Positions 1,002 to 23,479 of a stretch of 64,000 nt of DNA are shown here, one piece after another. The stretch is from Octopus bimaculoides (taxonomy: Eukaryota). Every line of letters begins with the position of its first letter. The stretch's first letter is position 1. The stretch covers positions 49,256,480 to 49,320,479 of the forward strand of contig NC_068992.1 in assembly GCF_001194135.2 (NCBI RefSeq), given 5' to 3'. The position numbers and the translations under genes were made by a program. Under the pieces are notes generated by a model, which ran no database searches, was not told where the DNA came from, and saw nothing but the letters and a program-made list of their open reading frames with translations.

Positions 1002-2936
1002 TTAAAGGAGCTGAAATATTGCAACAAAATTTTTTTCAGTCGGATAATTATACAACCAAGTTTTGCCCTGAATTTCAACTTCAGACTGAAGGTCTTTCCA
1101 TCTACCAGCTGGAATGTATATATCACGCTTTTTGATGCTATCACATAAGTAGGGGGCAACCATTAACTCATTGCCAATAAGAAATTGGTCTGAGATGTTG
1201 AGAGTTGTTTTATCATTAGGGTTGACCCACCAAAGGGGGCGAATAATTGGAAGGCCTGCTTTGATGTCTGAAGAAAGGCCTTCAATAGTTTTGTACACTA
1301 ATTTTCGATGGAGAGTGATAACGTCTCGTAAATGTAATGAAGTTGTATGATTATATAAGTACCTGCTGTATGATAAACGGACAACTGGCATAAAAGAAGC
1401 CAAGGTGATATATCGCATGTACAGTTCTTGAGTAATATTGGGAAATTTTACAGGGGAAAGAGTTATGTACGGATAGCCTAACATACTAACAGTTAGTGCC
1501 TGATCAATGACATTATTAATACAGGTATACTTGCCTCTGGATACAAACATAGATTTAACATTGATCACTAATAGTTTATGTTTGTTTAATTTGGAATCAT
1601 AATAAAATATTTCTGAACTGTTTCTGTAGAATGACGCCATTTTGTCAACGTAGTCTTTTATAGTGTAACTTGTGTTATAAAAGCGAATATTCTTTGGAAT
1701 GTAGCTCTGTCCAATTGCTAAATTACGGAATCCTCCGAATTCTGGCTTCGTAGAAAGGTGAAGCAATTTGTCCAAATACCATTTTGAAGCATTTGGGTTG
1801 GAAACATCTACAATAGCCATCTGTTTATTTTGCCATTTGACAAGCTTTGTAACGTCACTCAAATCATCCCTTATAAAATATCCTGAGGTCATTCCAACAT
1901 TGAATTCTCTGGATGTGAAATGGAAATAAGGACTTATTGGATATATAATACCAATATTATGACAATCAACTTGACGAAGGAATTCAGAGATATTTCGGAA
2001 TTGTTTGGGATCAAAAGTGAAATCTCCCTGACTTTGTTGCCAATTGTTATTCAATTCGATGTAAGTATCGTTATAAGTGTGAGCGAATTTACTATTAATG
2101 AAATTAAGGATGGCACTTTGTATAGAAATATTCCTGGAATTTTCTTCAAAAGACCAGATCATTGTTTTTAAAAGTTTATTGTTCTTTGCCAGTTCATCTT
2201 GGCTCACAGGTAAAAATGTCTTTTTCATGTTGACATAAGTATCTCTGATATCACTACCTTGACACAAATAATAGTGGAGTTGTTGGTTGGGATATGGTTG
2301 TCTTAGGTCTGGCAGAAGACAAAATAATCCATCATCAGAAGAATTCCAGCTAATTTTAAAAGGATGTGAGTCATTTACAAAGATTCCAACACCATCAGAA
2401 CTAATCCAAAGTGGTTCTAATACAGAACCCAACATATCTGATGATTCTGTTGAAAATGGAATAGGACCAGTAGAAAAATTCTTCAGTGGCCATGATTGCC
2501 TTGAACCAATGTTCATTCCATACCAATTAGAAGATTTTATCTGGTAACAATCAAGGAACTCTTCTACCTGTGAAATTTCCCAATTTATAGAATAGCAATA
2601 CAGACTGCCTTTTTCTTCATGTAGTATTTGTAGCTTGGTAGAGCGCTGACTTTGATAGCACAATTCTTGAATGCTTTGTTCTTTAATCTTTGGTTGACAA
2701 AAATGAAAGCTAGATGTGAGGTTGATTCCTAACCATCCAGTTAGAGTTATTCCTTTAAATTTATTCAACAGTTGTACTTTCCGTTCAGCTTCAGAGAAAT
2801 GGATAAGTCGGCCAACCAAAATAGCATTGGTTTGTCTTGCATGAAGAACTCTCACAGATATGAAACCAGCAAGAATCAATATGAAGAGTGTGGCCACACT
2901 GTATTTAAGCAGTTTGGAGTTTTCTTTACTTGGAGT
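1002..2936 (-). CDS. MYORG-like: Terminal coding exon of a GH31 (MYORG/KIAA1161/SITS-binding protein family) type II membrane glycosidase-like protein, probably catalytically inactive
   Basis: Uninterrupted 645-codon frame ending TAA (1004-1002). Motifs match MYORG: WISSDGVGIFV, GDFTFDPKQF, LTVSMLGYPY, ELYMRY..LASFMP, PIIRPLWW, DQFLIG.ELMVAP, RDIYIPAGRW. TM helix SVATLFILILAGFISV near 2900-2850; 13 N-X-S/T sequons after it. Acceptor gtttatattttatctattcattAG at 2938-2937, so the exon starts upstream of the ORF-track GTG start. Confidence 0.93.
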   Translation of the reverse strand, partial: TPSKENSKLLKYSVATLFILILAGFISVRVLHARQTNAILVGRLIHFSEAERKVQLLNKFKGITLTGWLGINLTSSFHFCQPKIKEQSIQELCYQSQRSTKLQILHEEKGSLYCYSINWEISQVEEFLDCYQIKSSNWYGMNIGSRQSWPLKNFSTGPIPFSTESSDMLGSVLEPLWISSDGVGIFVNDSHPFKISWNSSDDGLFCLLPDLRQPYPNQQLHYYLCQGSDIRDTYVNMKKTFLPVSQDELAKNNKLLKTMIWSFEENSRNISIQSAILNFINSKFAHTYNDTYIELNNNWQQSQGDFTFDPKQFRNISEFLRQVDCHNIGIIYPISPYFHFTSREFNVGMTSGYFIRDDLSDVTKLVKWQNKQMAIVDVSNPNASKWYLDKLLHLSTKPEFGGFRNLAIGQSYIPKNIRFYNTSYTIKDYVDKMASFYRNSSEIFYYDSKLNKHKLLVINVKSMFVSRGKYTCINNVIDQALTVSMLGYPYITLSPVKFPNITQELYMRYITLASFMPVVRLSYSRYLYNHTTSLHLRDVITLHRKLVYKTIEGLSSDIKAGLPIIRPLWWVNPNDKTTLNISDQFLIGNELMVAPYLCDSIKKRDIYIPAGRWKDLQSEVEIQGKTWLYNYPTEKNFVAIFQLL

Positions 2937-3172
2937 CTAATGAATAGATAAAATATAAACATATAATTAGCCATGGTAGAAAATGACAGTCTGAATGTGG
3001 AGCATTTAATACAATTAAATTATTTCAAGTCTTACTGCACAGACTTGAGAATAGATATCAAGAGAATGTAGAATATGAATGCAAGAGTGGTACCAACTGT
3101 GAGTGGAGTACTTGGGTCAGTGATGAAAAACCTTTAGAAACACCTTGGCAAAACTGGAATCTGTTTCAGCAT

Positions 3173-3558
3173 TTGTTGTTGGCACTCCATAGCTTACGAC
3201 GTCGAGGGTTCCAGTTGATCCAATCAACGGAACAGCCTGCTCGTGAAATTGACGTGCAAGTGGCTGAGCACTCCACAGACACGTGTACCCTTAATGTAGT
3301 TCTCGGGGATATTCAGCGTGACACAGTGTGACAAGGCTGACCCTTTGAATTACAGGCACAACAGAAACAGGAAAGAAGAGTGAGAGAAAGTTGTGGTGAA
3401 AGAGTACAGCAGGGTTCGCCACCATCCCCTGCCGGAGCCTCGTGGAGCTTTAGGTGTTTTCGCTCAATAAACACTCACAATGCCCAGTCTGGGAATCGAA
3501 ACCGCGATCCTATGACCACGAGTCTGCTGCCCTAACCACTGCACCATTGTACCTCCAC
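3173..3558 (-). mobile_element. tRNA-derived SINE, family B (full length)
   Basis: Reverse complement of the copies at 24625 and 32994; A/B-box head and (AAC)n tail. Confidence 0.85.
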
Positions 3559-4743
3559 CAAAGCTTTCATACACCATAAATATTTTACCTTTCATTGCAC
3601 AAATTTTGTCAATTTCTTATTATTTTCTTTGCAGAAAACAGTATTTGAGAGTTGCATCTGTATGTTGTTGTAGTATTTATTGTTGTGTCTCTTGTTGTTG
3701 TTGTGGTTCTTATTGTTGTTGACTGGTTTGTATGTTTTGCCAAGCCTTCTAGGTTTTTTTTTTTTCATCTTGGTAGTACCAAACCTTTGGATCTTAAGAT
3801 TTGGGGTTCAAGCCACTGGTTTTTTTCTCTGTCCCACCACATATATTTCTCTTTGTTGACACCCCCCCCCCCTCGCCCTGCACACACTCTATACCTCATC
3901 ACTGAGCTATTGGAAGCGGATGTTGTAAAATAAGACAGAAGACAGAAAAGGAAAAGAGATGATGATGATGATGATGAGAAAAAAATGACAAGTGACATAT
4001 TCCAAAATAATAATAATAATAATAATAATAAGAATAATAATGATGATAATAATCTCAACAGATGTGAAAAGAAAATTGCGTTTTCCTAAAGTTGGAGAAA
4101 AATAAGTTGAAGACAGCAAGCATGAAAAAATAAAATGAATAAATAAATAAATAAAACCTTTAACAAAAAATAAATGAAAAATAATGAAAATACTAATAAA
4201 AAAACAGGTCAGTTAAATGTTAGTGGGAATTCAAAAAAGAATTTTAAGGTGTAACCTTTAACCTTTCTTGAAAGGAGTTGACATTTGAACTTTAGTTAAA
4301 AAAATGAAGCTTAATGCAATTATCAAAACACAGTTAGGGGAATGTTATGCAATGCATTATAATATTAAATATATATAATGTTATATAATACAGTGTTATA
4401 TAATGCAGTGTTATATACTCTTGGGGGTCAGCAAAAGATTTATTATAACAGTAATGTTGAATACAGATATAGAAGACAACATATATCTACACACACACAC
4501 ACACATTATATAAGCTTGTTTATCTGAGAGAAACTTGAACCTGTTGTTTTTGGTGTAAAGTCCTGTGTAACTGTTTATAAAATTTATTTCTATGCACGTA
4601 ACACAAACAGTTATATACATAATAATGTATGTGCATACACACAAGCATAAACAAGTTTCTGCCTTTTTTTGTTTGCATATTACCAGACTTTTATCATCAC
4701 CACCACCACCACCACCACCACCACCACCACCACTGTCACCACG

Positions 4744-4780
<37 letters not shown>

Positions 4781-5454
4781 CCGACACCAATGTCACAATG
4801 GCAACCACCACTGTTGGTCATCATCCTCCTCATCATCAAAACCTTCACTGCCATCACCACTGCCACCACCACCACCTTTATCATCGTTGTTTTTAAGTTT
4901 GCTTTCCACATCAACATCGATTAGATGAATCACCATGTTTCAAGACAGTTCTTATTCAAAAGTTACTGTCCTCCCAAACAGGTTGGGAACTAAGTGTCAC
5001 TCAAACATTCCATTTTTGATAAGATTTCTACGACAAAAAGCCCTTCCCAGTGTTAAACACTTTATAGAGTTTAACGGACACATACATACACACATACACA
5101 ATACATTTGTTCATTTATTTTATGACCATCTTTATATAGCCACCCAGACTGGTGATGTTGATGATGAAGTTCAACTTGAACTTTGTATTTTTACTTACTG
5201 GGTCTGGAAGAAGGGACAGTTCTTATAGCATTCAGAGATCTCCTTAATCTTTTCAATACAAACCTGCCTGAGACAGCCCCAGATTCTAACTCACTGTTCT
5301 AAGGGGTCTAAATTATAATCTACCACCAAAATTTTATGGTAATTTGTTCCAGCTCCCAGCTTAATAATCAGAAAGTTATTTTACTAAATTCTTCATAATT
5401 CAAAAAATTAATTAAAACAAAGGCAGCATATGTTGATAGAAATATGGTAACAAA

Positions 5455-5690
5455 GGTGTTAAACAGGTGAGAATGCTGTCATTAATGTTCCTTTCTCTTG
5501 AAGCTTTATAAATCAAAACCTGCAGGAAAAATACAAGCAGGGAAGGAATTCCAGAGAGGAGATGTTCTAAGAAGGAAGAACTGGGCATAGTGATTGGAGT
5601 GGGGCCAAGCAAAGAAGTGGATACAATGGGTGAAGGTACTTCTATTTTTCTTGGTTCTTGCATCAGAGTAACCAGTGAACATATAAAACA
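5455..5690 (-). mobile_element. CR1/L2-group LINE ORF2 3'-end fragment
   Basis: FFLLRTSPLWNSFPACIFP.GFDL.SFK resembles the SFF.RT..LWN.LP...FP...L..FK terminal motif. Confidence 0.55.
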
Positions 5691-6351
5691 TATAGAAACT
5701 AGCTAGCTTTTTGTTGCTGATGTGTATGTAGTTTCAAAATGCCTTATTTTACAACTATGAGATGTATTGTTATTGTTAAACACATTTCATCAATATAAAA
5801 CTTATATTAGTTGCATAATAGGCGTGCTTTAAATCAATTACATAACTTTGATATTAAAAAACTGCATACTCTGTCTTGAAGTACCAGGCGTCACTCCTTA
5901 CACACACACAATGACAAACATCCAATTTCCATCCACTAAACACCTGGCACCTTACCTGACCTATATATAATATCATATGTCAGAAAAGCTTCTGTAAAAG
6001 TCTCTGTGTTTTTGAGTTAGAGGTGTGGAGTAGGGAGGCTTTGTTCACCAAACACATACTGAATGTTCTTTCTCCTGAAAAAAGATATTTCTTTACACAT
6101 GTGGAAAGTAAAACAGGATTTTGTGAATTCTACAAAAACCACTGCTACAGTTTATAGTAGTGAATCACACCCGGATGTGTAAGAACCTACTTAGAGAAAG
6201 GTGCGAAATCTATGACTGAGTATTAAATGTCCTCTCCAATGACATAATACAATATCTGTAACAACATAGAGATCATCAAAATACGAATACAATGGCTGTC
6301 CTCTCATTTAACAAGTATGACCGTCGATGATAGATAATAATATATCGTGAT

Positions 6352-6515
6352 TGCATGAATGGCTGTGCAGTTAAGAAGTTCGCTTTCCAGGCAAGTGGTT
6401 CTTGGTTCAGTTCCACTGTGTGGTACCTTGGACAAGTGTCTTCTGTTATAGCCCCAGGCCAACTAAAGCCTTGTGAATGGATGTGGTACATCGAAACAGA
6501 AAGAATTCCATTGTG
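6352..6515 (+). mobile_element. SINE family A head, degenerate
   Basis: Similarity to 27956-28120. Further degenerate family A pieces lie at about 16965-17235 (-), 19145-19240 (-), 30535-30765 (+) and 58085-58185 (+). Confidence 0.7.
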
Positions 6516-6520
6516 TATGA

Positions 6521-6554
<34 letters not shown>

Positions 6555-6714
6555 TGCCATAATAGATTGCTGCTTGTTTCTTTCTGTGTTTCTTTCTGTG
6601 GAAGAGTGTAGGTTTGAAACGTTAAAGACTTTTTCAATTCCCGAGCGTTATACTAATACATCTGATTGTTTTCTACACCACCTGTCTTCGTCTTTTTGTT
6701 TTTTTGTGAATTCT

Positions 6715-6754
<40 letters not shown>

Positions 6755-6759
<5 letters not shown>

Positions 6760-7545
6760 ACAAGCTTACAGCAGGACCTAAATTCAATATGCAAGTGGGC
6801 CAAAATAAACAACATGCGGTTTAATGCTGGAAAATTTCAAGCACTGCACTGTCAACTCACGAATACAGTACAATCTACATTTACAGGACCCGAAAGCACT
6901 ACAATCCCAGAGTCACATGCAGTGAAGACTTGGGGGATCAGTATGTGCAATGACACATCATTTCATATGCACATAAGCAAGACGGCAGCAAAGTGCAGAC
7001 AACTGGCAAGATGGATACTGAGGTCCTTCAAGACAAGAGACCAAGAAACTATGTTGAGCCTGTGGAGAACCTTTGTTCTCAGTCACTTGGACTACTGCTC
7101 CCAGTTATGGTCACCATATAGTGCCAAACTAACAGTGGAGCTTGAAACAATCCAATGCCACTACACTAAAAAGATTGAGACATTGTAGCAGATGAGCTAC
7201 AGGGATAGGCTGAGAAAACTGCAACTTTACTGCCAGGAGTGAAGGTGTGACAGATATGTAATAATCTACATATGGAAATCTTTAGAAGGGCTAATACCTA
7301 ATTTCTGCATTGAGTGTTATACAAATGCCACAACTGGCCGCCATTATATTGTACCAAAGGTACCATCCACTCCATCTATATTCAGGACCAAGTATTGCAA
7401 TAGTCTAGGGTTCAAAAGCCCATAGCTCTTCAATGCCCTGCCACAAACATTAAGAAATCTGCATAAGGTGGAAGTAGATGTCTTCAAAAAAGGAACTAGA
7501 CATCCTCCTCTCCTCAATACCAGATGAACCAACAACCTGACATGA
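6755..7545 (+). mobile_element. CR1-like LINE fragment (RT C-terminus)
   Basis: LQQDLNSICKWA..NNMRFNAGKF; WILRSFKTRD..ML.LWRTFVLSHLDYCSQLWSP; LFNALP. Stops downstream of 7188. Confidence 0.88.
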
Positions 7546-7620
7546 GGTACAGAGAGAGAGCAACAGAGAGAGAGAGAGAGAGAGAGAATGAGAGAGAGAG
7601 AGAGCTAAGAAACAACTTAC

Positions 7621-8017
7621 ACTTTTCTTTGGTCGTGATTTCAAGCGTGGAACTGTGATTACTGTTGTGTGTTCTGCAAACCGAACGCTATCAGTCGAGT
7701 CAACTGTGGCATACTGTGAATTGCATCTTGTGGTGGGAGCAAAGTTGCAATTCGCTGTCAAGTCATTTTCTCCTTGGCCTCCTCCTCCTCCTCCTTCTCC
7801 TCCAATTCCATCTTCTTGCTCAGCATCTTCTGCTAAGCTAAATTTCACGTATGTATCTGTGGTAGTGTTTTGCTCATCTTCTGCATTTGTTGTTTCAGAC
7901 GGGAGAAGCAGTGGTAATTCACTGCCCGTGTCCTCAAACACCTTGTCATCTTGTAGGAGAGCAGAGTCTTCTTGGTTGAATTCTGTAGAGTCGAGCAAGC
8001 AAACATCTTCGACAGTA
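7621..8017 (-). CDS. Internal coding exon of the GH31-like gene (acidic cytoplasmic N-terminal tail)
   Basis: Acceptor ttttgcctcatttgcAG (8019-8018) and donor AGT|GTAAGT (7620-7615). Open frame TVEDVCLLDSTEF...PRLKSRPKKS ends in phase 0 and joins exon 2936 (TPSKENSKLLKY + TM), placing a basic stretch before the TM as expected for type II topology. No in-frame ATG, so a phase-2 upstream exon is required. Confidence 0.8.
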
Positions 8018-8187
8018 CTGCAAATGAGGCAAAATTTCAAAACATCAGTTTTAAATATAAAAACTTTATATTTATCTTAGTTAAATATGAGAAACAGTTT
8101 GAAATATTGTTCTGGGAAGGGCTGGTGAATGTAAGATTGAAAAGACTGTCTAATTTTGTAGTGGGGAAAATTAAAACGTCTTCTTAA

Positions 8188-8477
8188 CCCATTACCTCCC
8201 ATTATTCTATTAACTGGAATTTTTTAATGAAACTTTGATTTCTAGCATAAAACAGCCTTAGAAACACACTGGAATGATCAAAATAACATTTCAAAATAAC
8301 ATTTTAAATAGAAATAAGCGAGATATTGGGTGAAAAATTAGCAAATCTCATTTGAATATCAGAGAAATATACCTAGTAGATATAGCAAAAAGGTTAGATA
8401 TGTGTAAATATTGACAGATAATTACGAAATTTGTAATTTTTAAGTGATCTCATATGAGGTCACTGGTAGGTAATGGG
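8188..8477 (+). mobile_element. piggyBac-type MITE, 290 bp
   Basis: TTAA on both sides (8184-8187, 8478-8481) and TIR CCCATTACCT.CCA. Confidence 0.85.
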
Positions 8478-8994
8478 TTAAAGTTGTTGGATTGGTTTAC
8501 CAAGTGCTTTACAGATAGCACTGGATGTATTTATCATGGTATTGGGCACTTGTAAGGTTGCTTGGTAACTCTTCTCAAGACTAAAGAATTCTCATGACTG
8601 AGAGGGAGAACAGGAGAAAAGGTGAGAGATTAAAGTATGATGGGGGAAGGGTAGTAGTGGAGAGACTAAGAGATATAGTATTAGAGAAAGGAATAATAGG
8701 AGGAAGGGATTAGTGAAAGCAAGTCAGAGAATGAAAAGGATGGTGGGGTGGATTGAGAAGATCAAGATTCAGGCAGAAGGTGTGATGTGTAAAAGAGAAA
8801 TAAAGATCTTAGGGAAAAGGATGAGGAACCAGAGCGTATTCCAAAAGCAACATGTCCAAAAAGGCAAGCCCATATCACCATACATTTCTTGTTCTCTTTA
8901 TGCATTTTGTCTTTCTCTCAACTCATACAACCTACCTACTCATGTCATTTCTCTAATTTATTCTCCTGCCTACTGTATTATTAATATATGTATG

Positions 8995-9218
8995 TGTGTG
9001 TATATGCTTGTGTGTCTGTGTTTGTCTCCCCAATATCGCTTGACAACCGATGCTGGTGTGTTTACGTCCCCGTAACATAGCGGTTCGGCAAAAGAGACCG
9101 ATAGAATAAGTACTAGGCTTCCAAAGAATAAGTCCTGGGTCGATTTGCTTGACTAAAGGCGGTGCTCCAGCATGGCCACAGTCAAAAGACTGAAACAAGT
9201 AAAAGAGTAAAGAGTATA
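8995..9218 (+). mobile_element. SINE family A, 3' half
   Basis: Matches the 3' half of 27956-28353. Confidence 0.85.
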
Positions 9219-9269
9219 TATATATATATATAAATTGTCAAGAATGTGATTATATATATATACATATAT

Positions 9270-9408
9270 ACGACGGGCTTCTTTCGGTTTCCGTCTACCA
9301 AATCCACTCACAAAGCTTTGGTCGGCCCGAGGCTATAGTAGAAGACACTTGCCCAAGGTGCCGCGCAGTGGGACTGAACCCGGAACCATGTGGTTGGTAA
9401 GCAAGCTA
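9270..9408 (-). mobile_element. SINE family A, 5' half
   Basis: Reverse complement of the family A head. Confidence 0.85.
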
Positions 9409-10681
9409 CACACATGCACATACATATAGCTATAGCTATGTTCCACGTATGTATTTACGTATGCATATATTAACATGCAAACACACAAAAACACACTCGT
9501 TAATGGGGTGTGTAGAGTTGTTTTACCCTCAGGTCAGTCCTCACAGAGACCACCCATGCAAAGGGGTAGCCGCGTGTAGATGATATCTTAAAGATCCATC
9601 GCTATAATGAACACCTCATTACACACACACACACACATACAAACATGCAGTTTACCATAATATTTAATGTAGTGTGGCCGTCGGAACGTCACATTTTCTC
9701 CATTGTCTTGTCTGTGTATGTCTAGAAATAAGTTTTAGTGGTGACTATGGGAGAATGTTGGTGGTGGAGCGAGATTAGTAAGAACGCAACGAACTTTTAA
9801 AAATGTTGCTGTCTATGTCTGCGAAGTGGAGCAGGACGGACTTTTAAAAATGAAACAGTTGTGTATTATGTTGTATGTAGGTAATTGTATAATTGTTCAA
9901 CGATGTTTACCTTTCCTCGAAATGGATATAGTCTAGATTAATTGAACGTATGATGGCCCATAATAATTCAAGTTACGCTCACTTTAATTACGTATCGCTA
10001 AACATTACTATGCTTACATAGACTTAAACAGCGAACGAAATAAAGGAAAATGTACACATATACACCTACATTTATGTATACATATATATATATAGAAAAG
10101 TTGTACTTAGTTATAACTTAAACCTTACACCCTCTCCTTCTCATACACACACATATGCATATTCACACACAAATAGATACATCTACGCGCACACAAGTTA
10201 TATTAAGTTATAAATAACTTGTCTACTTTATTTCTCACCTCTTTCATAAGTATAAACACGCATACTACCTGTTGATTCGTCCCATTCTCACTAATTAAAT
10301 GTCTCAATTAGATGAATTAAGATTGCTATATCTATCTATCTACTTATGTGAATGTGTACACACACACACACACACACACACAATAGGCGAGAGCTATATA
10401 TGCTCAATATCGAAAATACATCGTAGTGCTCAAATAAATTTGAACTTGCGAATTCTTCGTCCAGGGCAAAACCCAAGGTGTCAAGAGTGGCCGTAAGAGA
10501 AATACCAAACGCGTTGATATAGAGGTAGCAATGCAGATAAACAATTAGGCTTCACACACACAAGTCTACATTTATTAATATACACACATATTTACACGGA
10601 GCACAAAACAAATACAGAAAAATATGTAATTTCGTAACTCGACAGCTGTTTCAGGAAGCTCAGAGTCACGTAATAATCATA

Positions 10682-10990
10682 ATCTTACTATAATGGGCGT
10701 TATATCCGTCTGTCCGTGTCTTTGTCTGTTGCCTCTTCACGGCCAGACAACTGGACCAATGGTTACGATATTTTTGGGGTTTACAAAGACGATCGCCAGG
10801 AAGGTTTCTAGTATTGAAATATCAGAAAGTATGGTTATTTCGTGGATATCGATTTTTGAATTGATAAACCACCTTCGCATTTTTATTAAAAATTCACCGA
10901 CCACTAGTAACTCTGAATTTTCACCGCAGAGTTCGTGGCCCCATCGTAGATACGTATCATTATCGAAGCATTAGGCACGGATATGTCTTG
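10682..10990 (+). mobile_element. Possible non-autonomous Helitron-like fragment
   Basis: A^TC start, then a GTCTGTCCGT microrepeat and CACGGCCA.AC.ACTGGACC.AT, typical of non-autonomous Helitron 5' ends. Confidence 0.3.
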
Positions 10991-11520
10991 CGTGTCACAT
11001 CCCGCAGCAAAATATCTGTTAATTTTTGCTCTATAACAATCTATAGATAGAGGACAGTTAATAGTGAAAATAAAATGGAAAAAGTGTTCAGTATATAGTG
11101 TGTGTGATTATTTAGTGGTTATTGAAGTGTATACGGGGGAGCCCTACAAACTACAGATAGGGTAAGGTGTCGGGAATGCTCTGGGACTTGAGGTGGTGTA
11201 CATATACAGCTAAGGAAGTAGAGAGTTTAGAGGCTCTATTTAAGAATGACTTCAAGTGAAATCAATGGTGCTGCCAATGTAGACCCTAGAACGTGGGAAC
11301 GTGGGGTTATTATTGCCTGGCATTTATATAAAGATGTTAGAGAGTAAACAAAATCCATCTAATAGACATAGTTAGAACACCCAACAATTTCAGGTTTTCC
11401 CACTGCTATGTTGATTCATGTTATCAGTTATCCAAGAAGTAGGATCAGCGGTGTTTTCGTAACTAGTATGGAACTGGGAGAGGGCATTAACGCAATCACG
11501 TGTGGTAAGGCTACAAGTAT

Positions 11521-11600
11521 TAGGGGCGATTGCACTAACGTCACTTTCCGTTCTTGCTCCACCTCCTCTTTTCCTTCAACTGTTTATATCTGCTGACGCT
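11521..11600. promoter_or_regulatory. Candidate promoter or enhancer (CRE-half/ETS-like)
   Basis: CGTCACTTTCCG at 11539-11550 followed by a pyrimidine-rich tract. No downstream exon identified. Confidence 0.2.
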
Positions 11601-12849
11601 ACTATTTGAACCGCTTTCGCTAATTTTCTCTTGACAAGGGAAAACGGACTTATTCTAATATCTCCATGTGACTGGTTACTGATTACATACTTTCACTTAA
11701 TTGCAGATTTCATCTGCAAGTCATGATTATTATGTAGCTCTGAGCTTCTTGGAACAGCTGTAGAGTTAAGAAATTACATATTTTCTTCATATCTTTCTAT
11801 ATTTTTGTGCTCCATGTAAATATATAGCGTGTTTTTCTCCCCCTCCCCCTCTCTCACACACACACCTGTTCATCTGTGCGTCTGTGCATTTAGCATGTTT
11901 TTCCGTCCATTGTTTATTACTATAGGTGTTTGACTTCTGAATGTAGTATATATATATATATATGGTAGTCTTAACTACTCAGAAAATAAATAAAGGAATT
12001 AGACGTCAACCATTGTCAACTCAATAATAAAAATGAAACTGAAAAGAAATTTTTTCAACTGACAGTTTTATTGCAAAATTGTTTATGCATGGAAAAAATA
12101 AGTAGACGTTACAGGCGGCCAGAAGCACCTAAGAAAATTGTAAAAAAAACATAACTAGACGACCTGATTCAAAAGAATTTCTTTCTTTGAGATTTTTGCT
12201 CCATAACAATTTATACTGAGAGTGCCTATAAATTTCTTGCATTGTTGGTATTAATAAACAAGCCAGTGAAGTGTTGCAGTGTGTGGGGAATCACCATACA
12301 AGTTCAGATAACAATGGTTATAGGTGCTGTACGTATAGGTATCATTATCGAAGCATTAGGCACGGATATGTCTTGGGTCTCACAGCAAAATATCTGTTAA
12401 ATATGGGTAGATCAATATCGACATTCGGTATAACTATTTCATTTTATTATCGACTTACCGACTAATGCTGATAAAAAATCTTTCGACATTTAAAAACGAT
12501 ATGGTTTTATGCATTTCTAATTCACCAGGCTATGATAAAGCATTGAAAACTGTGCGTAGGATAAAAGCAAACAGAAATCTTCTAAATTACATTTGTCCCA
12601 ACATCAGTCTATGTGTTTCAGGTGGAGAGACGTTATCAAATCTAAATTGTTAAGTTCGCATCAACCCTAAATGCTCACTTAGGCATGTCCGTCACTAAGG
12701 GGTGAACTTGATGGCAATGCCTCCTCACTATTCAATGGTACGCCTTCAGATTTACAGTATACACTTATATCGAAACTCCACTTGAGCATTATTACAAATC
12801 TGGCGACGGACCTGCATTTAGGTCGGAGTTTACTCCGGTTTCTGAGACG

Positions 12850-13075
12850 TTTCCATTCGTTACTATATTTCTCTTGAAATATGCTGCTTTGTTTAAATTA
12901 ATTTGGAAAATAATGAAGAATTTAATGAAATAAGTGCATTTATTAAAACTAGCGTTCAGAACATAAATTAATGTGAAATTTTTATGAAAGAGTTAATTTA
13001 GATCCCTTTAAAACAAGAATTTTGCACCAAAGGACCAAGGGCGATTTCCGGCAGGTTGATATCGAAGGGGTTAAG
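12850..13075. mobile_element. Older piggyBac-type MITE (TTAACCC termini)
   Basis: Ends GAAGGGGTTAA; interior related to 58556-59020, 39880-40000, 43340-43420 and 5330-5420. A related family ends AAAGGGTTAA at about 235 and near 53800. Confidence 0.55.
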
Positions 13076-14019
13076 TGATTGAAAGTACAAGACCCTTCGC
13101 TGAACAAGCAAGTCTTCACAAGATTAACTCCAGCTGTTTTTGGTACTTATCTTTAACTGAGTAAACTGAACATGAAATAAAGTGACATAGGCGATCGCCG
13201 TGACATATATAAGGACACAAGCCATTACCGGGGCCAAAAATCGAACCCCGAGACTTTACAATCGCGATCTCAACACCCTAACAACAAAGACACGTGACAT
13301 CACTGAAACCAAAACAAAACAGAAAGCATAATACGAAATAAAGCTAACTTAATGGTTCTGTCTTGACTTGTAGAATTTGTGGAAAAGAGAAAGGAACAAA
13401 GTAAGAAAGCAACACAGCAGAATAATGGATTAAATTGAATCAAAATTAAAGAACAAAAGAAAACATGATTTTCTTCTTCTCTCTCTTTCTCCCTTTCTCT
13501 CTTTCTTTTTTTTAAACAACCACCAAACAAAAAAAATAGTTGTTTTAAAGTCAGCTTAAACAGAGACAAGACGAATGTTAAGTAATTATTTCCAAATGAA
13601 GATCACACAGAAAAGAACGAGAAAGAAAATGTGATTAAAACGTTTTATAAGACTTAGAACAAATGTGTGTTGGTATGGAACACATTGGTTGATTAAAGAA
13701 TACTGATTAAATCATTAAAAATAATTAAACAAATGAGCCATTAAATCAATCAATCTGTCTATCCATCTATCTATCAGTATATGGTGATCTTTCGAGATAT
13801 ATATATATTAGTTTATGTATATATTAATATTATCTCAGTTATTAAAACTTTTGATAATTTAAATACGTTAATAGTTATCAGAGGTAGCAAAATTACACTA
13901 AAAAACAAGATATCACAGCCGTTTTATAGGTAGAGATACCAAGTTAAAGTGATACATTTTGAGAAGATATGGATAATAATAATAAATGGAGCAAAACGCA
14001 TGTCAATAAAAGTTCCTTT

Positions 14020-14110
14020 AATTCCTACACATGTTTCAAAATAAATGAGAGCTCTTTCACAAAGAAGAAAGAGCTGTTGGGGTTCCTCATATATTTCTCT
14101 TCAGGGAGTT
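14020..14110 (-). ncRNA. Type I minimal (Penelope-type) hammerhead ribozyme motif, core intact
   Basis: CUGAAGA (14104-14098); stem II 11 of 12 bp plus a 9-bp distal stem; GAAA (14037-14034); self-complementary stem III ACAUGUGU; GUA cleavage triplet; stem I UCC/GGA plus AA/UU. Confidence 0.7.
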
Positions 14111-14165
14111 CATAATAAAACATATAATAGCAAGACAAAAACGAAATGATGAGGTAACTTACGAG

Positions 14166-14210
14166 CAGAGATGTTACATGGTCAGTCTGACTGACCATGT
14201 AACATCTCTG
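14166..14210. repeat. Perfect 45-bp palindrome
   Basis: CAGAGATGTTACATGGTCAGTC-T-GACTGACCATGTAACATCTCTG: 22-bp arms and a 1-nt spacer. Confidence 0.95.
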
Positions 14211-14318
14211 GGTACTTCAGGGAGGATCTGGGTGCATTACAAGAAGGGGTCTCTTGTACCTCAAGAGCTGAAGGCACTAAGTACTCAGGGACATGTACAT
14301 ACACTCAAGGCAACGTGG

Positions 14319-14365
<47 letters not shown>

Positions 14366-14639
14366 CTGAAGAACAGAGAAGATGATGGGACCAGGATGTG
14401 AATGTACTGAGCAAGAGTATTGATGGCAGAAACAGGATAGGGAGATAAAGTAATGACTAACAGTAAAGATATGGTGAACGGAGATTGTATTGGATATATA
14501 TACAGTCCATTTCAGTTTCTTAGACAAACATCAAGAAGGGAAAGAGAAATAGTGAACAGGATGGTGGTAGGGGATAAAATGTGGGTGGGTCTCATACAGT
14601 GGTATGGGATGAGTGATAGAGAGATGAGAAGGGAAGCAA

Positions 14640-14938
14640 CAGCAGTAGATTTGACAGGTGCAGGTGTGGCTGTGTGGATGAGAAATTTGCTTCCCAACCA
14701 TATGGTTTGGGATCAGCTCCACAGTGTGGCACCTTGGACACTTATCTTCAACTATAACTCTAAGCCAGCCAAAGCTTTGTAAGTGGATTTGGTAGATGGA
14801 AACTGAAAGAAGCCTGTAGTGTGTCCGTTTGCATATGTGTGGGTGTATGTGTGGGCAAGTGTCTTCTACTATAGCCTCGGGCCGACCAAAGCCTTGTGAG
14901 TGGATTTGGTAGACGGAAACTGAAAGAAGCCCGTCGCA

Positions 14939-14983
<45 letters not shown>

Positions 14984-15185
14984 TTGTGTCTGTGTTTGTC
15001 CCCCCCACCATCGCTTGGCAACCGATGCTGGTGTGCTTGCGTCCCCGTGAATTAGTGGTTCGGCAAAAAGAGACCGCTAGAACAAGTACTAGGCTTCCAA
15101 AGAATAAGTCCTGGGATCGATTTGCTCAACTAAAGGTGGTGCTCCAGCATGGCTGCAGTCAAATGACTGAAACAAGTAAAAGAAT
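14640..15185 (+). mobile_element. SINE family A with an internally duplicated middle segment
   Basis: The GTGGATTTGGTAGA.GGAAACTGAAAGAAGCC block occurs twice (about 14782 and 14900) before the tail. Confidence 0.75.
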
Positions 15186-17320
15186 ACACACACACACACA
15201 CACAAATAACATCCCAGTCTCAGACAGTCTCTCCCACCCCTTGGAACTATTTCCATTCTTCATAATCTCTGTCCACACGATTTCAACCAATAATCGTCTT
15301 TCTGTGCCTTCAGTCACTGTTCTATCTCTCTCTCTTCTGCCTCTGCTATACTCCACTCTAAACACCTCTCTTATCTGCTCTCAGTCCCAACACCCTTCCC
15401 CATCTGCCACCATGACCCACCTACTCCAGCCCCTTATATGTCCCTATAACTCCTTCTCCACACCTGCTACACATTGCACATCATCCCATACCGTCCTAAA
15501 CCACTCCTACCTCCCACTTTATTCTCTCTGCATACTAGTATTTCCCATCATCTGCACCCACACCCTTGTTCAGCGCTCATTAAATCCACCTCTGCCTCCA
15601 CCTCTTTACTGCCCGCACATGCTCACATGAAAGCCTCTACTCTCTCATCCTCTCTCCCATGATTCACCATCCCATCTGTGTCCACTTTGTTCCTTGTGAG
15701 TCTACTCTAGTACTACTACCTTCACTGCCTTCCACTTATCTTCTTCAGCTGTGCATCTCTTCTACAGCTAAACACTTCTGCTTGTCCCTCTATCTACCCT
15801 AACTTTTCAATACTTGGTACACAGCCACCCATCTCTACTTTCTCCTCCCAAATACTTCCTCTTAGTAATGGGCACTTTTTCTTTTTCCTTTTTCTCTGTT
15901 CTTTCCTGTCTTTCAAGTTACATGACAACATCACAAGTGGTGGTACCTAAAAAACAAAAACAAAAAAAAACCCACCAAATATATGTTGCAAAGTTGTTGG
16001 CATTAGGAAGGACATCCAGGGTGCTGAACCATGCCAAAGATGACATTGAAGCTCAATGCAGCTCTGTAGTTCACTGGTTTCCTACCAAAAAGTCCTACCC
16101 ATTCCAGCTTGGAAAGTAGATGTTTAATGATGATGATGATGATGATGATGATGAAATACATCATCATGATTGTTATCATCATTTAACATTTGTTGTCCAT
16201 ACTGGCATGAGTTGTACGGTCTGACAGGAGGCAGGCCAGCTGAAGAGCTGTCCAGGGTTCATGTGTATTTTGGCATTGGTTTCCGCAGCTGGATGCCCTT
16301 CCTAACTCTAACCACTTAACAGAGTGTGCTGGATGCTTTTATGTAGCACTGGCACAGGTGCTCATAGACGGCACCAGCACTCATGAGGCCACAAGATTAG
16401 GATTGCTAAGGCGGCGAGCTGGAAGAAACGTTAGCACGCCGGACGAAATGCTTTGCGGTATTTCGTTTGCCATTACATTCTGGTTTCAAATTCCGCCAAG
16501 CTCGACTTTGCCTTGCACCCTTTCGGGGTCGATTAAATAAGTACCAGCTGCGCACTGGGGTCGATATAATCGACTTAATCTGTTTGTCTGTCCTTGTTTG
16601 TCTCCTCTGTGTGTAGCCCTTTATTGGCAGTAACAAAATAAGATTAGGATTGCTTAGCTGCAGAGGGATGGAGAGGACACACATGTATGCAAGGATAACC
16701 ACAATTTTACTAAGTTCGATGTGTTTTCTCAAGCACAGCAAACTGCATATGAATGTATGTGTGTGTGCAAGTGTCTCCGAGTCTTGACATTGTATGACAG
16801 TAGTAAATGAGTATCACCATCATAACATGTCCTGTCACAAGGAAATATTACACTTGGAAAAGCAAGTGAAGGTCAGTGACCGGAAGAGCATCTGGCTGTA
16901 GAAAATTTGCCTTGGTCAATTCTGCCCAACCATTGACAGTATGGAAAAGGGGACATTATTCTTTGTAAACCTAGTACTTATTCTATCAGTCTCTTTTGCT
17001 GACCCACTAAGTTACAGGGATGTAAACACACCAACGTCAGTTGTCAAGCAGTGGTGGTGGTGGGGAAACACAGACACACATGACGGGCTTCTTTCAGTTT
17101 CTGTCAACCAAATCCACTCACAAGGCTTTGGTCAGCCCGAGGCTATAGTAGAAGACACTTGCCCAATGTGCCATGCGGTGTGGTTGAACCCAGAACCATG
17201 TGGTTGGGAAGCAAGCTTCTTACCACACAACCACTCTTTGCACCTTATATAAATCCCAGCTGTCTCATCTAAGGTGAGGACCATGTATTGCAATAGCTTG
17301 GGATTCAAGGGCCCACAGCT

Positions 17321-17391
<71 letters not shown>

Positions 17392-17994
17392 TCATCATTT
17401 AACATCCGCTTTCCATGCTAGCATGGGTTGGACGATTTGACTGAGGACTGGCGAACCAGATGGCTGCACCAAGCTCCAATCTGATCTAGCAGAGTTTCTA
17501 TGGCTGGATGCCCTTCCTAAAGGAAAGTAGGGATGAAAACATCCAATCATTCATTGGCTCCATTGTTCAATACCCAATTTTGTAGAGAAAAACCTTACAA
17601 TTCACATGTAAAGTTGCAAGTCTGGAAAACCCTTACAAACTGAGAAGGTGAATAACCGAGGAAAGTGATGCTAAAAGTACATTGGTGGGGAACTGGTATT
17701 ATGAAGAGGGGGTAGGGGAATGAGTGATAACTGGCAGTGGTGTGGTGAGAGGGAAAGGGAAAGAGGAAGTGTAGTGCTGGGAGTTATTATGAAAGATGGG
17801 AGAAGAGTTTTAAGAACGGCAGAATGTGTCGTGTAGGGAAGGACCTTCTGTTGATTAGCAATAAGTAGTGCTGGACGAAAGTCAAAGAAAATACCTAACC
17901 ATGCATTCAACTGATGAAGAAGAATGAGTTATATGTATGTGTATGTACATATATGAAAGTGTGTGGTTTAGTGGTTAGTTTGTATACATATATG

Positions 17995-18338
17995 TGTGTG
18001 TGTGCCGTTGCCAGTACCGCCTGACTGGCCTTCGTAGGATTTTCGAGCGAGATCGTTGCCAGTGCCCCTGGACTGGCTCTTGTGCGGGTGGCACAGAAAA
18101 TACACCATTTCGAGCATGGCCATTGCCAGTACCGTCTGACTGGCCTTCGTGCGGGTGACACGTAAAAGCACCCACTACACTCTCTGAGTGGTTGGCGTTA
18201 GGAAGGGCATCCAGCTGTAGAAACTCTGCCAAATTAGATTGGAGCCTGGTGTTGCCATCCGGTTTCACCAGTCCTCAGTCAAATCGTCCAACCCATGCTA
18301 GCATGGAAAGCGGACGTTAAACGATGATGATGATGATG
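17995..18338 (+). mobile_element. RTE 3'-end repeat (family D) with tandem internal units
   Basis: Same 3' end as 30340-30530. Other copies at about 16160-16390 (-), 17390-17520 (-), 31900-32260 (+), 39060-39190 (+), 41850-41930 (+) and 52414-52500 (+). Confidence 0.8.
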
Positions 18339-18711
18339 AACTAAAAGTCGGAGAGGGACGGGATAAACTACCTGCATCAACTTGCTATAAAGACAGGTAG
18401 TAATTTTACCTTGTCCTTATTCAAAGTTTCCAATTCGTAAGGATTCTCCAGACTTGCAACTTTACACGTGGCGGTGCATTAAGAAGGGCGTCCAGTTATA
18501 GGAAGCAAGGCAAAAATGAAACTCGCAAGGGAGATGTGGTCCCCGCTGAGATATCGAAGAGAGCAGCGAAGTCCCATTTAACTCATGCCAGCATGGAAAG
18601 CTAACGTAAAATGCTGCAGCTGCCATATATACATGCATATATATATATGTATGTGTGTGTATATGTATGTGTGTGTGTGTGTNNNNNNNNNNATATGTAT
18701 GTGTGTGTATA

Positions 18712-18754
<43 letters not shown>

Positions 18755-18809
18755 ATATGTATACTGTTATGAGTATAAAACCTGTATTATATATATTCTA
18801 CATATGATG

Positions 18810-19075: not shown

Positions 19076-19079
19076 ATGC

Positions 19080-19147
<68 letters not shown>

Positions 19148-20082: not shown

Positions 20083-20117
<35 letters not shown>

Positions 20118-21633: not shown

Positions 21634-21666
21634 TCACTACTGTTCTTTCTCGGCTCTGTCATATCT
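21634..21666 (-). CDS. Candidate first or cassette coding exon of the GH31-like gene (MTEPRKNSS)
   Basis: ATG at 21662-21660, 29 coding nt, then GA|GTAAGT: phase 2, matching the 8017 acceptor (gives MTEPRKNSSDTVEDV). An upstream acceptor ttttttcattAG (21668-21667) would make it a 33-nt symmetric exon. Confidence 0.55.
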
Positions 21667-23377: not shown

Positions 23378-23479
23378 TTACAAAAATTATATCATCTAAT
23401 CAGATGACTTTCTCTAAATTCATTAAATATATTATACCATATTCAGAACACTATTCCAGAAAATTATCACCGTTCTCTT

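What the first reader, a model, noticed from the sequence alone, without database searches (positions are those of the whole stretch)
1002..2936. Intact but apparently catalytically dead GH31/MYORG-family membrane protein (pseudo-glycosidase)
Seen: a 645-codon open exon with family motifs and 13 N-glycosylation sequons. Established: MYORG-type GH31 enzymes use a nucleophile Asp in (F)KFDAGE, an acid/base Asp in RLVDRDS.W, and substrate-binding IDD and PDM.GG motifs (recalled from memory). Manual alignment gives GFRNLAIGQSYIP (Leu at the nucleophile, 1721-1719), LVINVKSMF (Asn/Lys in place of D-R-D, 1562-1554), IELNNNW in place of LEIDD (2060-2040) and ITLSPVKF in place of ILPDMVGG. Inference: every active-site acid is lost while the fold is preserved, suggesting a non-catalytic lectin, sensor or scaffold, with an unusually long acidic cytoplasmic tail of about 155 aa.
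Basis: partly seen in the sequence, partly recalled or inferred. Interest (0 to 1): 0.72.

Follow-up and report, generated by a model that had tools for sequence, protein, structure and literature searches.

The report
Catalytically dead MYORG-like octopus membrane protein
This octopus gene encodes an intact, conserved membrane glycoprotein that keeps the fold of the sugar-cleaving enzyme MYORG but has lost its catalytic and sugar-binding residues, and it belongs to a large, apparently undescribed group of such "dead" relatives in molluscs.

Summary
Window 2936..1002 (minus strand) is the last of three coding exons of a 786-aa type II membrane protein. The other two are at 21662..21634 and 8017..7621.

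- **Homology:** it matches human MYORG structures at E=6e-63. An AlphaFold model (pLDDT 90.8) superposes on MYORG with TM-score 0.81-0.85.
- **Active site:** the nucleophile Asp463 is Leu and the acid/base Asp520 is Asn. W321, D353, D354, W426, K461, E466, R504, R517 and D552 are also replaced. These include both sugar-stacking tryptophans, so lectin binding in the old pocket is unlikely.
- **Not a pseudogene:** dN/dS is 0.05-0.28. Orthologues with the same Leu occur in Octopus sinensis, Argonauta and probable squids or cuttlefish, where they are seen as spliced transcripts.
- **Wider family:** the gene sits inside an all-dead clade that includes gastropod and bivalve proteins. Of the 154 nearest family representatives, 88 lack the nucleophile Asp.
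- **Conservation:** the most conserved parts are the membrane helix with the start of the lumenal domain, and a 24-aa cytoplasmic motif next to the membrane. The acidic distal tail evolves almost neutrally.

Best reading: a non-catalytic scaffold or auxiliary subunit. The partner and the role are unknown.

The parts
1002..2936 (-). Last coding exon (644 codons plus TAA stop). It encodes residues 143-786: the end of the cytoplasmic tail, the membrane anchor and the whole GH31-like lumenal domain.
   Evidence: Open frame. Acceptor AG at 2938-2937. Pfam PF01055 and PF21365. MYORG PDB hit at E=6e-63. tblastn with the O. sinensis, Argonauta and probable decapodiform orthologues.
7621..8017 (-). Coding exon 2. 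It encodes most of the acidic cytoplasmic tail (residues 10-142).
   Evidence: tblastn with P0001, P0002 and P0003. Acceptor cag|TACTGTC and donor AAAAGT|gtaagt read directly from the sequence. The frame joins exons 1 and 3 to give a 786-aa product.
21634..21662 (-). Coding exon 1: ATG plus 9.67 codons (MTEPRKNSS-D), followed by a gtaagt donor. An acceptor-like AG just upstream suggests a further 5'UTR exon.
   Evidence: Peptide search and sequence reading. The peptide matches the N-terminus of the O. sinensis protein P0001.
2838..2897 (-). Single hydrophobic membrane anchor (residues 156-175, VATLFILILAGFISVRVLHA), giving a type II topology.
   Evidence: Kyte-Doolittle 19-mer windows score above 1.6 only here. 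AF2 models one long helix over exon-3 residues 4-35. The anchor plus the start of the lumenal domain (residues 155-190) is 72% invariant among five coleoids.
7645..7716 (-). Conserved cytoplasmic motif next to the membrane, QYATVDSTDSVRFAEHTTVITVPR (residues 111-134). It contains a Y-x-T-V element of the YxxPhi type.
   Evidence: About 70% invariant between octopods and the probable decapodiforms, against 8% for the distal tail. A regex search found it only in the cephalopod orthologues among all proteins fetched.
1719..1721 (-). Leu548 (TTA) at the position of the GH31 catalytic nucleophile (human MYORG D463), within FGGFRNLAIGQSYIP.
   Evidence: It is Leu in all six cephalopod sequences and Asp in 115 of 115 canonical MYORGs.
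1554..1562 (-). Asn601-Val-Lys603 at the position of the acid/base segment D520-R-D522.
   Evidence: phmmer alignment to 7qqf and 7qqh. The MAFFT and hmmalign alignments are shifted by 3 residues and put Ser at D520 instead. No alignment places an acid there in the Octopus sequences.
2046..2051 (-). Asn438-Asn439 at the position of the substrate-binding D353-D354 (the IDD motif).
1455..1457 (-). Ser636 at the position of D552 of the PDM(V/I)GG motif. The GG that follows is deleted.

Best explanation
**What it is.** The gene encodes a 786-aa type II membrane glycoprotein of the MYORG branch of glycoside hydrolase family 31, and it is a true pseudoenzyme. It keeps the whole MYORG architecture: an N-terminal beta-sandwich, a (beta/alpha)8 barrel and C-terminal beta domains sitting directly on a single membrane helix. 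It has lost the catalytic nucleophile, the acid/base residue and essentially all sugar-contacting residues of the -1/+1 subsites. It therefore cannot hydrolyse glycosides by the GH31 mechanism, and it probably does not bind sugar in the old pocket.

**How old the loss is.** The loss predates the octopus-squid split. By tree position it probably predates the cephalopod-gastropod-bivalve split. Purifying selection has maintained the protein since.

**What is shown.** Homology, retained fold, residue losses, purifying selection, and transcripts in the probable decapodiforms.

**What is inferred (about 0.4 on its own).**
- It works through protein-protein contacts as a scaffold, auxiliary subunit or receptor in a secretory-pathway or surface membrane.
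- The invariant membrane helix, the first lumenal strand and the conserved cytoplasmic motif next to the membrane would be the partner-binding or sorting elements.
- The heavily glycosylated dead barrel would be a stable lumenal or extracellular module.
- The long, acidic, fast-evolving distal tail would be a disordered spacer.
- The working analogies are 4F2hc/rBAT and DPP6/DPP10.
For: - **Homology and fold:**
- **Residue losses:** W321 to E, D353 to N, D354 to N, W426 to Q, K461 to R, D463 to L, R504 to I, R517 to L, D520 to N, D522 to K, D552 to S. W321, D353, D354, W426, K461, D463 and E466 are kept in 114-115 of 115 canonical MYORGs, and all seven are changed in all six cephalopod sequences. 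The roles of these residues are taken from PMC9491548.
- **Selection:** dN/dS 0.05-0.28. There is only one 1-residue indel across 644 aa between octopus and the probable decapodiforms.
- **Expression:** uninterrupted full-length CDS on roughly 3-kb Logan contigs. One orthologue sequence was seen on 55 contigs.
- **Secretory topology:** a single anchor and 13 lumenal sequons, 9 of them conserved. Conserved cysteines.
- **Region-wise conservation:** membrane helix plus start of the lumenal domain 72% invariant; cytoplasmic motif next to the membrane 70%; lumenal domains 42-57%; distal tail 8%. Tail dN/dS is about 1 against O. sinensis.
- **Tail length:** dead relatives have longer N-terminal tails than canonical ones, median 77 against 21.5 aa, with 29 of 84 against 0 of 18 reaching 100 aa. 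A second canonical set has a median of 13.5 aa and a maximum of 72.
- **Possible dimer:** four of the five hydrophobic residues of the MYORG dimer interface stay hydrophobic.
- **Tree position:** the gene is nested in an all-dead clade with gastropod proteins in 100 of 100 NJ bootstraps.
Against: - No partner, location, tissue or activity was observed. The scaffold or auxiliary-subunit mechanism is an analogy, not a result.
- The AF2 model was built from an alignment dominated by canonical MYORGs, so retention of the fold is partly imposed by the method. No coordinates were available to inspect the pocket.
- The alignment around the acid/base residue is ambiguous by 3 residues.
- Argonauta has Asp and Glu there (LVIDIESMF), so that position is not uniformly non-acidic.
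- Transcript evidence comes from the probable decapodiform orthologues, not from the window's own species.
- The tail-length comparison is not corrected for phylogeny, and it relies on predicted protein models.
Confidence: 0.75

Rival explanations
1. It is a non-catalytic lectin. The dead barrel would still bind a carbohydrate, either in a remodelled version of the old pocket or on a new surface, as chitinase-like lectins do.
For: - The barrel and its pocket-lining strands remain conserved in cephalopods (FGG.R.LA.G.S.IP and IEL...W.Q.SQG.F.F).
- D520N MYORG still binds Gal-alpha1,4-Glc (PMC9491548), so loss of the acid/base residue alone does not abolish binding.
Against: - Both stacking tryptophans and every hydrogen-bonding side chain described for DGJ or Gal-alpha1,4-Glc binding are replaced: D213, D353, D354, K461, R504 and R517.
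- The replacement residues differ between octopods and the probable decapodiforms (E/D/G, N/T, N/S/D, Q/H/R). They are no better conserved than the background.
Confidence: 0.13
2. It is still an enzyme. It would use non-canonical catalytic residues or a different chemistry, or its acids would be restored by the A-to-I mRNA recoding that is common in coleoids.
For: - Asn438, Asn439 and Asn601 are AAT or AAC codons. A-to-I editing at the first base would make them read as Asp.
- Lys603 (AAA) could be edited to read as Glu.
Against: - The nucleophile codon is TTA, and editing can only give TTG, which is still Leu.
- There is no Asp or Glu within 8 residues apart from one Glu at -7.
- The residue before the Leu is Asn in octopods but Ser in the probable decapodiforms, so there is no conserved editable site.
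- E466, K461 and both tryptophans are also lost.
Confidence: 0.04
3. It is a decaying or functionless gene copy whose open frame survives by chance or through recent origin.
For: - The distal tail exon has dN/dS of about 1 against O. sinensis.
- No expression data were obtained for the window's own species.
Against: - A 644-codon open frame in 34-38% GC DNA.
- dN/dS of 0.05-0.28 in the lumenal exon.
- Orthologues with the same exon structure in O. sinensis and Argonauta.
- 54-57% identity to full-length transcripts from probable decapodiforms, with a single 1-residue indel.
- Nine conserved glycosylation sequons.
Confidence: 0.02

Closest known systems
Human MYORG (KIAA1161/NET37), a GH31 alpha-galactosidase; PDB 7QQF, 7QQG, 7QQH
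   Same: - Type II single-pass topology, with the GH31 domain sitting directly on the membrane helix.
- The same domain order.
- 28% identity over 558 aligned residues, phmmer E=6e-63, Foldseek TM 0.81-0.85.
- N-glycosylated.
- The hydrophobic dimer-interface residues are largely retained.
   Different: - The nucleophile, the acid/base residue and all described -1/+1 subsite residues are replaced.
- The PDMVGG loop is shortened.
- The cytoplasmic tail is about 155 aa and acidic. Canonical MYORG-like proteins have a median of 13-22 aa and a maximum of 72.
- 13 lumenal sequons against 6 in human MYORG.
Other catalytically dead MYORG-like proteins of molluscs. Examples: Lottia XP_009056707, Gigantopelta XP_041366764, Plakobranchus GFN88622, Batillaria KAG5708576, Mizuhopecten XP_021346137, and a second Octopus paralogue XP_014773149 / XP_029647573.
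   Same: - The same family and topology.
- The nucleophile Asp is lost. It is Leu in the gastropod and scallop proteins, as here.
- They group with the cephalopod clade to the exclusion of all canonical sequences in 100 of 100 NJ bootstraps.
- All are annotated automatically as 'myogenesis-regulating glycosidase-like' or as hypothetical proteins.
   Different: - Only 23-30% identical to the octopus protein.
- The gastropod proteins have short tails, with the anchor starting at residues 28-35.
- The conserved cephalopod cytoplasmic motif was not found in them.
4F2hc (SLC3A2) and rBAT (SLC3A1), the heavy chains of heteromeric amino-acid transporters (from my own knowledge)
   Same: Type II single-pass glycoproteins. 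Their ectodomain is a glycosidase fold (GH13), and 4F2hc's has lost its catalytic residues. They act as trafficking and stabilising subunits of a multi-pass partner.
   Different: - GH13, not GH31.
- The partner is held by a disulfide from a cysteine just outside the membrane. Here the first lumenal Cys is about 47 residues after the anchor.
- No partner is known here.
DPP6 and DPP10, dead dipeptidyl-peptidase-like auxiliary subunits of Kv4 channels (from my own knowledge)
   Same: Type II membrane proteins with a variable cytoplasmic N-terminus, a conserved membrane helix that contacts the partner, and a large glycosylated catalytically dead ectodomain.
   Different: An unrelated fold (beta-propeller plus alpha/beta-hydrolase). 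The comparison is an analogy of logic only.
Chitinase-like lectins (GH18, e.g. YKL-40) and alpha/beta-Klotho (GH1), which are known pseudo-glycosidases (from my own knowledge)
   Same: Glycosidase folds that lost catalytic acids and took on binding or co-receptor roles.
   Different: Chi-lectins keep the aromatic sugar-binding cleft, whereas here it is dismantled. Klotho proteins are type I and belong to GH1.

Membership tests
Glycoside hydrolase family 31 (sequence and fold family) | Significant match to the GH31 TIM-barrel and C-terminal domain profiles. | tested here: met
   PF01055 scores 59.3 bits (cut-off 23.5). PF21365 scores 64 bits (cut-off 24.4).
Glycoside hydrolase family 31 (sequence and fold family) | N-terminal beta-sandwich, (beta/alpha)8 barrel and C-terminal beta-sandwich architecture. 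| tested here: met
   AF2 model with pLDDT 90.8 and pTM 0.89. The Foldseek top 50 hits are all GH31, and MYORG scores TM 0.81-0.85. Caveat: the alignment behind the model is dominated by canonical MYORGs.
GH31 retaining glycosidase (active enzyme) | Catalytic nucleophile Asp at the end of barrel strand 4 (K-F-D-A-G-E; MYORG D463). | tested here: not met
   Leu548 in three independent alignments. No acid lies within reach in the sequence.
GH31 retaining glycosidase (active enzyme) | General acid/base Asp (MYORG D520). | tested here: not met
   Asn601 by phmmer, or Ser by MAFFT and hmmalign. Argonauta alone has Asp at the phmmer-aligned position.
MYORG-type alpha-galactosidase | The -1/+1 subsite residues W321, D353, D354, W426, K461, R504, R517 and D213. 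| tested here: not met
   All are substituted or unaligned. W321, D353, D354, W426 and K461 are kept in 114-115 of 115 canonical sequences.
MYORG-type alpha-galactosidase | Type II single-pass membrane anchor N-terminal to the GH31 domain. | tested here: met
   One hydrophobic segment at residues 156-175. It is modelled as a helix continuous with the domain.
MYORG-type alpha-galactosidase | Hydrolysis of alpha-galactosides (4MU-Gal, Gal-alpha1,4-Glc). | not testable with these tools
   Needs recombinant protein.
Pseudoenzyme (functional, non-catalytic homologue of an enzyme) | Clear homology to an active enzyme, with essential catalytic residues lost. | tested here: met
Pseudoenzyme (functional, non-catalytic homologue of an enzyme) | Maintained by purifying selection and expressed, i.e. 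not a pseudogene. | tested here: met
   dN/dS 0.05-0.28. Full-length spliced transcripts in two probable decapodiform samples. Expression in the window's own species was not tested.
Glycosidase-derived lectin (chi-lectin type) | Retention of the aromatic and hydrogen-bonding sugar-binding residues of the parent enzyme. | tested here: not met
   W321 to E, W426 to Q, and D353/D354 to N/N.
SLC3-type heavy chain (4F2hc/rBAT) | An extracellular cysteine close to the membrane that disulfide-links the light chain, plus a GH13 ectodomain. | tested here: not met
   The first lumenal Cys is C222, about 47 residues after the anchor. The fold is GH31. Only the working logic is comparable.

The most novel reading that the evidence does not exclude
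Dead MYORG-like proteins may form an old, diverse and unrecognised class of type II membrane receptors or auxiliary subunits in molluscs, and possibly in other protostomes such as horseshoe crabs.

- They would have arisen by one or a few ancient losses of catalysis.
- They would then have diversified more than the enzyme itself, repeatedly gaining long cytoplasmic tails.
- Coleoid cephalopods would carry at least two such lineages, and may have lost the canonical enzyme altogether.
Probability: 0.3. Interest if true: 0.7.

Novelty: new variant of a known kind. Interest (0 to 1): 0.5.

Why it matters
MYORG is a human disease gene (primary familial brain calcification). Its natural substrate and cellular role are still unclear.

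This finding points to a large natural family in which the MYORG scaffold has been kept for hundreds of millions of years without any catalytic or sugar-binding residues. That implies the fold has a second, non-enzymatic use. The conservation pattern suggests this use lies in the membrane helix and the regions next to the membrane. Identifying the partner in a cephalopod or a bivalve could show what that use is, and whether vertebrate MYORG shares it.

There is also a practical point. Genome annotations currently name all these proteins "myogenesis-regulating glycosidase", which is misleading for enzyme inventories of molluscs.

Tried and rejected
1. **Shallow AF2 run.** A run on an 8-sequence alignment gave a useless model (pLDDT 39). 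It was replaced by a 122-sequence run.
2. **Profile search.** Searching the word-indexed protein database with a 21-sequence profile returned only the 7 proteins already known. Names for the distant relatives had to come from cluster look-ups instead.
4. **Literature.** I searched for KIAA1161 with mollusc, GH31 with pseudoenzyme, 'family 31 glucosidase KIAA1161', MYORG with cephalopod terms, and GH31 with 'catalytically inactive'. Nothing on dead MYORG-like proteins turned up.
5. **Rescue by A-to-I editing.** Considered and rejected, because the TTA Leu codon cannot be edited to Asp.
6. **4F2hc-like disulfide cysteine next to the membrane.** Looked for and absent.
7. **Extra domains.** A Pfam scan of the 950-1240-aa dead relatives found only the GH31 domains.
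8. **A canonical MYORG in cephalopods.** This could not be settled. The look-up of the sample carrying the canonical fragment P0006 gave only an uninformative run accession.
9. **Other ORFs in the window.** The other long ORFs (574-1005+, 4411-4917-, 6355-7188+ and others) are low-complexity or intronic and have no Pfam match, apart from a sub-threshold PHD finger.
Full report
**1. What is in the sequence**

On the minus strand the frame is open from 2936 to a TAA stop at 1004-1002, which is 644 codons. The upstream end of the open frame is a splice acceptor (ttcattAG|ACT).

tblastn with the orthologues found later locates a second coding exon at 8017..7621. It is flanked by cag| and |gtaagt. 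A peptide search finds the initiator exon at 21662..21634 (ATG...AGTGA|gtaagt).

Joined, the three exons give a 786-aa protein. O. sinensis and Argonauta hians show the same three-exon layout. Non-coding DNA of the window is colinear with the O. sinensis locus at 85-93% identity. The last exon differs by 3% (dS about 0.07-0.08). The window therefore comes from a different but related Octopus species.

**2. Architecture**

- There is one hydrophobic segment, residues 156-175.
- Upstream of it lies a tail of about 155 aa with pI 4.3 (30 acidic against 14 basic residues).
- Downstream lie about 610 residues carrying 13 N-x-S/T sequons and 9 cysteines.
- The downstream part matches Pfam GH31 barrel and C-terminal domain models above their cut-offs.
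- It matches human MYORG (7qqf, 7qqh) at E=6e-63 over residues 109-641 of the exon product, at 28% identity.
- A first AF2 run on 8 sequences failed (pLDDT 39).
- A run with 122 sequences gave pLDDT 90.8 and pTM 0.89. The best Foldseek matches in the PDB were the MYORG chains (E about 1e-45, TM 0.81-0.85), followed by bacterial GH31 alpha-galactosidases.
- The model shows one long helix through the anchor running straight into the first beta-strand, as described for MYORG (PMC9491548).

**3. The active site is gone**

The MYORG paper assigns D463 as the nucleophile and D520 as the acid/base residue. It lists D213, W321, D353, D354, W426, K461, R504 and R517 as the residues that hold the sugar.

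Mapping through the phmmer alignment gives these changes:

| Human MYORG | Octopus |
|---|---|
| D213 | unaligned |
| W321 | E406 |
| D353 | N438 |
| D354 | N439 |
| W426 | Q511 |
| K461 | R546 |
| D463 (nucleophile) | L548 |
| R504 | I585 |
| R517 | L598 |
| D520 (acid/base) | N601 |
| D522 | K603 |
| D552 | S636 |

A MAFFT alignment with 115 canonical MYORG-like proteins includes many bivalves, gastropods, a chiton, brachiopods, echinoderms and vertebrates. In it, W321, D353, D354, W426, K461, D463 and E466 are kept in 114-115 of 115 sequences, and all seven are changed in all six cephalopod sequences. An hmmalign to a profile built from those canonical sequences agrees.

Only the acid/base segment is ambiguous, by three residues: phmmer places Asn at D520, MAFFT and hmmalign place Ser. 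Neither places an acid there in Octopus. Around Leu548 the only acid within 8 residues is a Glu at -7, and around Asn601 there is none.

**4. It is not a pseudogene**

- Orthologues were found in O. sinensis (96% identity), Argonauta hians (78%) and three sequences at 54-57% identity.
- Two of those three lie on Logan contigs of about 3 kb that carry the uninterrupted 790- or 791-aa CDS. They are therefore spliced transcripts.
- One such sequence was seen on 55 contigs.
- The lumenal exon aligns with a single 1-residue indel.
- dN/dS (NG86 / YN00) is 0.22/0.28 against O. sinensis, 0.10/0.12 against Argonauta, and 0.05/0.06 between the two probable decapodiforms.
- Nine of the 13 lumenal sequons are conserved in all five sequences compared.

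**5. It is one member of a large dead radiation**

An exhaustive HMMER search of 1.84 billion cluster representatives found 238 relatives at E<=1e-30. After the cephalopod cluster, the next best is only 30% identical.

Aligned to the canonical profile, only 45 of the 154 nearest representatives keep both catalytic aspartates. Eighty-eight lack the nucleophile Asp, and 17 have Leu there. This sample is biased, because it was ranked by similarity to a dead query.

Cluster look-ups place dead members in:
- gastropods: Lottia, Plakobranchus, Batillaria, Gigantopelta;
- bivalves: Mizuhopecten, Sinanodonta, Tegillarca;
- the horseshoe crab Tachypleus;
- a second Octopus paralogue on another chromosome (XP_014773149, XP_029647573; Thr at the nucleophile position).

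Canonical members include a scorpion, Lingula, an annelid, amphioxus, a hemichordate and a sponge.

In 100 NJ bootstraps the cephalopod clade is always monophyletic. Its common ancestor with the gastropod Leu-type proteins never includes a canonical sequence. The immediate sister alternates between an unnamed transcript (P0008) and the gastropod/bivalve group. Catalysis was therefore probably lost before the cephalopod, gastropod and bivalve lineages separated. This is an inference from an NJ tree only.

**6. Where the constraint lies**

Fraction of invariant positions among five coleoid sequences:

| Region | Invariant |
|---|---|
| Distal tail | 8% |
| Cytoplasmic motif next to the membrane | 70% |
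| Anchor plus first lumenal strand (155-190) | 72% |
| Lumenal domains | 42-57% |

The cytoplasmic motif is QY(A/S/G)TVDSxDSVRFA(E/K)H(T/A)TV(F/I)TVPR.

- Against O. sinensis the tail exon has dN/dS of about 1 and a Gly-run indel.
- The former pocket residues vary between octopods and the probable decapodiforms.
- Dead relatives tend to have long N-terminal tails. The median is 77 aa, and 29 of 84 reach 100 aa. Canonical representatives have a median of 21.5 aa and 0 of 18 reach 100 aa (Mann-Whitney p=0.001, not corrected for phylogeny). A second canonical set has a median of 13.5 aa and a maximum of 72.
- The extra N-terminal 400-550 residues of the longest relatives contain no Pfam domain.
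- Four of the five hydrophobic residues of the MYORG dimer interface stay hydrophobic.

**7. Interpretation**

Shown: a conserved, glycosylated, type II membrane protein with a MYORG fold and no GH31 catalytic machinery.

Inferred:
- Both stacking tryptophans and the hydrogen-bonding residues are gone and their replacements are not conserved, so sugar binding in the old pocket is unlikely.
- The strongest constraint lies on the membrane helix and the segments next to it. The most economical mechanism is therefore protein-protein interaction in or at the membrane, as a scaffold, auxiliary subunit or receptor. The dead barrel would serve as a stable lumenal module and the acidic tail as a disordered appendage.
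- The Y-x-T-V element fits the YxxPhi sorting-signal pattern (from my own knowledge). This hints at trafficking beyond the ER, but it is untested.
- The working analogies are 4F2hc/rBAT and DPP6/DPP10 (from my own knowledge). The protein is not a member of either family.

**8. Rivals**

- **Lectin with a remodelled site:** possible but disfavoured, for the reasons above.
- **Residual or editing-restored enzyme:** rejected. The Leu codon TTA cannot be recoded to Asp, although the three Asn codons and the Lys could in principle be edited to read as acids.
- **Decaying gene:** rejected by section 4.

**9. Novelty**

RefSeq calls these proteins "myogenesis-regulating glycosidase(-like)". Five full-text searches found no paper describing catalytically dead MYORG or GH31 homologues in molluscs or elsewhere. 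That library is incomplete, so this is not proof of absence.

Pseudo-glycosidases as a class are well known. I therefore rate this as a new variant of a known kind: a dead, tail-bearing branch of the MYORG family. It is not categorically new.

**10. Open point**

A search with the canonical Lingula MYORG returned 888 hits. The 120 listed include more than 20 molluscan entries from bivalves, gastropods and a chiton, but no cephalopod. This suggests that cephalopods may lack a close canonical MYORG. It does not show it, and the tools available here could not test it further.

Noticed in passing
Not in the window; protein cluster P0012 (O. bimaculoides XP_014773149, O. sinensis XP_029647573, O. 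vulgaris CAI9737272): Octopus has a second MYORG-like paralogue of 831-833 aa on a different chromosome-scale contig. It also lacks the catalytic residues (Thr at the nucleophile position) and also has a long N-terminal tail, with the anchor starting near residue 170.
   Followed up: partly
Family level: Of the 154 nearest MYORG-like cluster representatives, only 45 keep both catalytic Asp residues. Dead members have significantly longer predicted cytoplasmic tails than canonical ones. Some dead relatives of 950-1240 aa carry 400-550 extra N-terminal residues with no Pfam domain (the one whose organism was looked up is from a bivalve).
   Followed up: partly
One search hit list: The top 120 of 888 hits to a canonical brachiopod MYORG include many bivalves, gastropods and a chiton but no cephalopod. 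This raises the possibility that coleoids lost the active enzyme.
   Followed up: no
Argonauta hians orthologue P0002 / L003:25065-26996: Argonauta reads LVIDIESMF where Octopus has LVINVKSMF. Under the phmmer register, Asp and Glu therefore sit at the D520 and D522 positions, while the nucleophile is still Leu. Its tail also carries an insertion of about 50 aa that is rich in Thr, Asn and His.
   Followed up: partly
window 7770-7800 (minus strand, exon 2): A GGA/GGC run encodes GGEGGGGGGQG. It differs by a 3-codon indel from O. sinensis. The whole tail exon has dN/dS of about 1 against O. sinensis, compared with 0.22 for the lumenal exon.
   Followed up: yes
window 7621-21634 and 2937-7620 (introns), compared with L004: The two coding introns are 13.6 kb and 4.7 kb here, but about 34 kb and 18 kb in O. 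sinensis. The window contains nine runs of N (10-867 bases; for example 22637-23033 and 59025-59891), so part of the difference may come from assembly gaps or collapsed repeats.
   Followed up: partly
window 27951-28362, 60403-60861, 38249-38483, 23194-23395 and others: An interspersed repeat of about 400 bp is present in several copies in the window. It occurs at many places and in both orientations in the O. sinensis locus at 80-92% identity, so it is probably a SINE-like element.
   Followed up: no
window 7570-7612 (minus strand): A (CT)n microsatellite begins about 10 bases after the exon 2 splice donor.
   Followed up: no
window 28979-29398 (+): A 139-aa intergenic or intronic ORF has a sub-threshold PHD-finger match (23.5 bits, cut-off 24). 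It is probably a remnant of a transposable element.
   Followed up: partly
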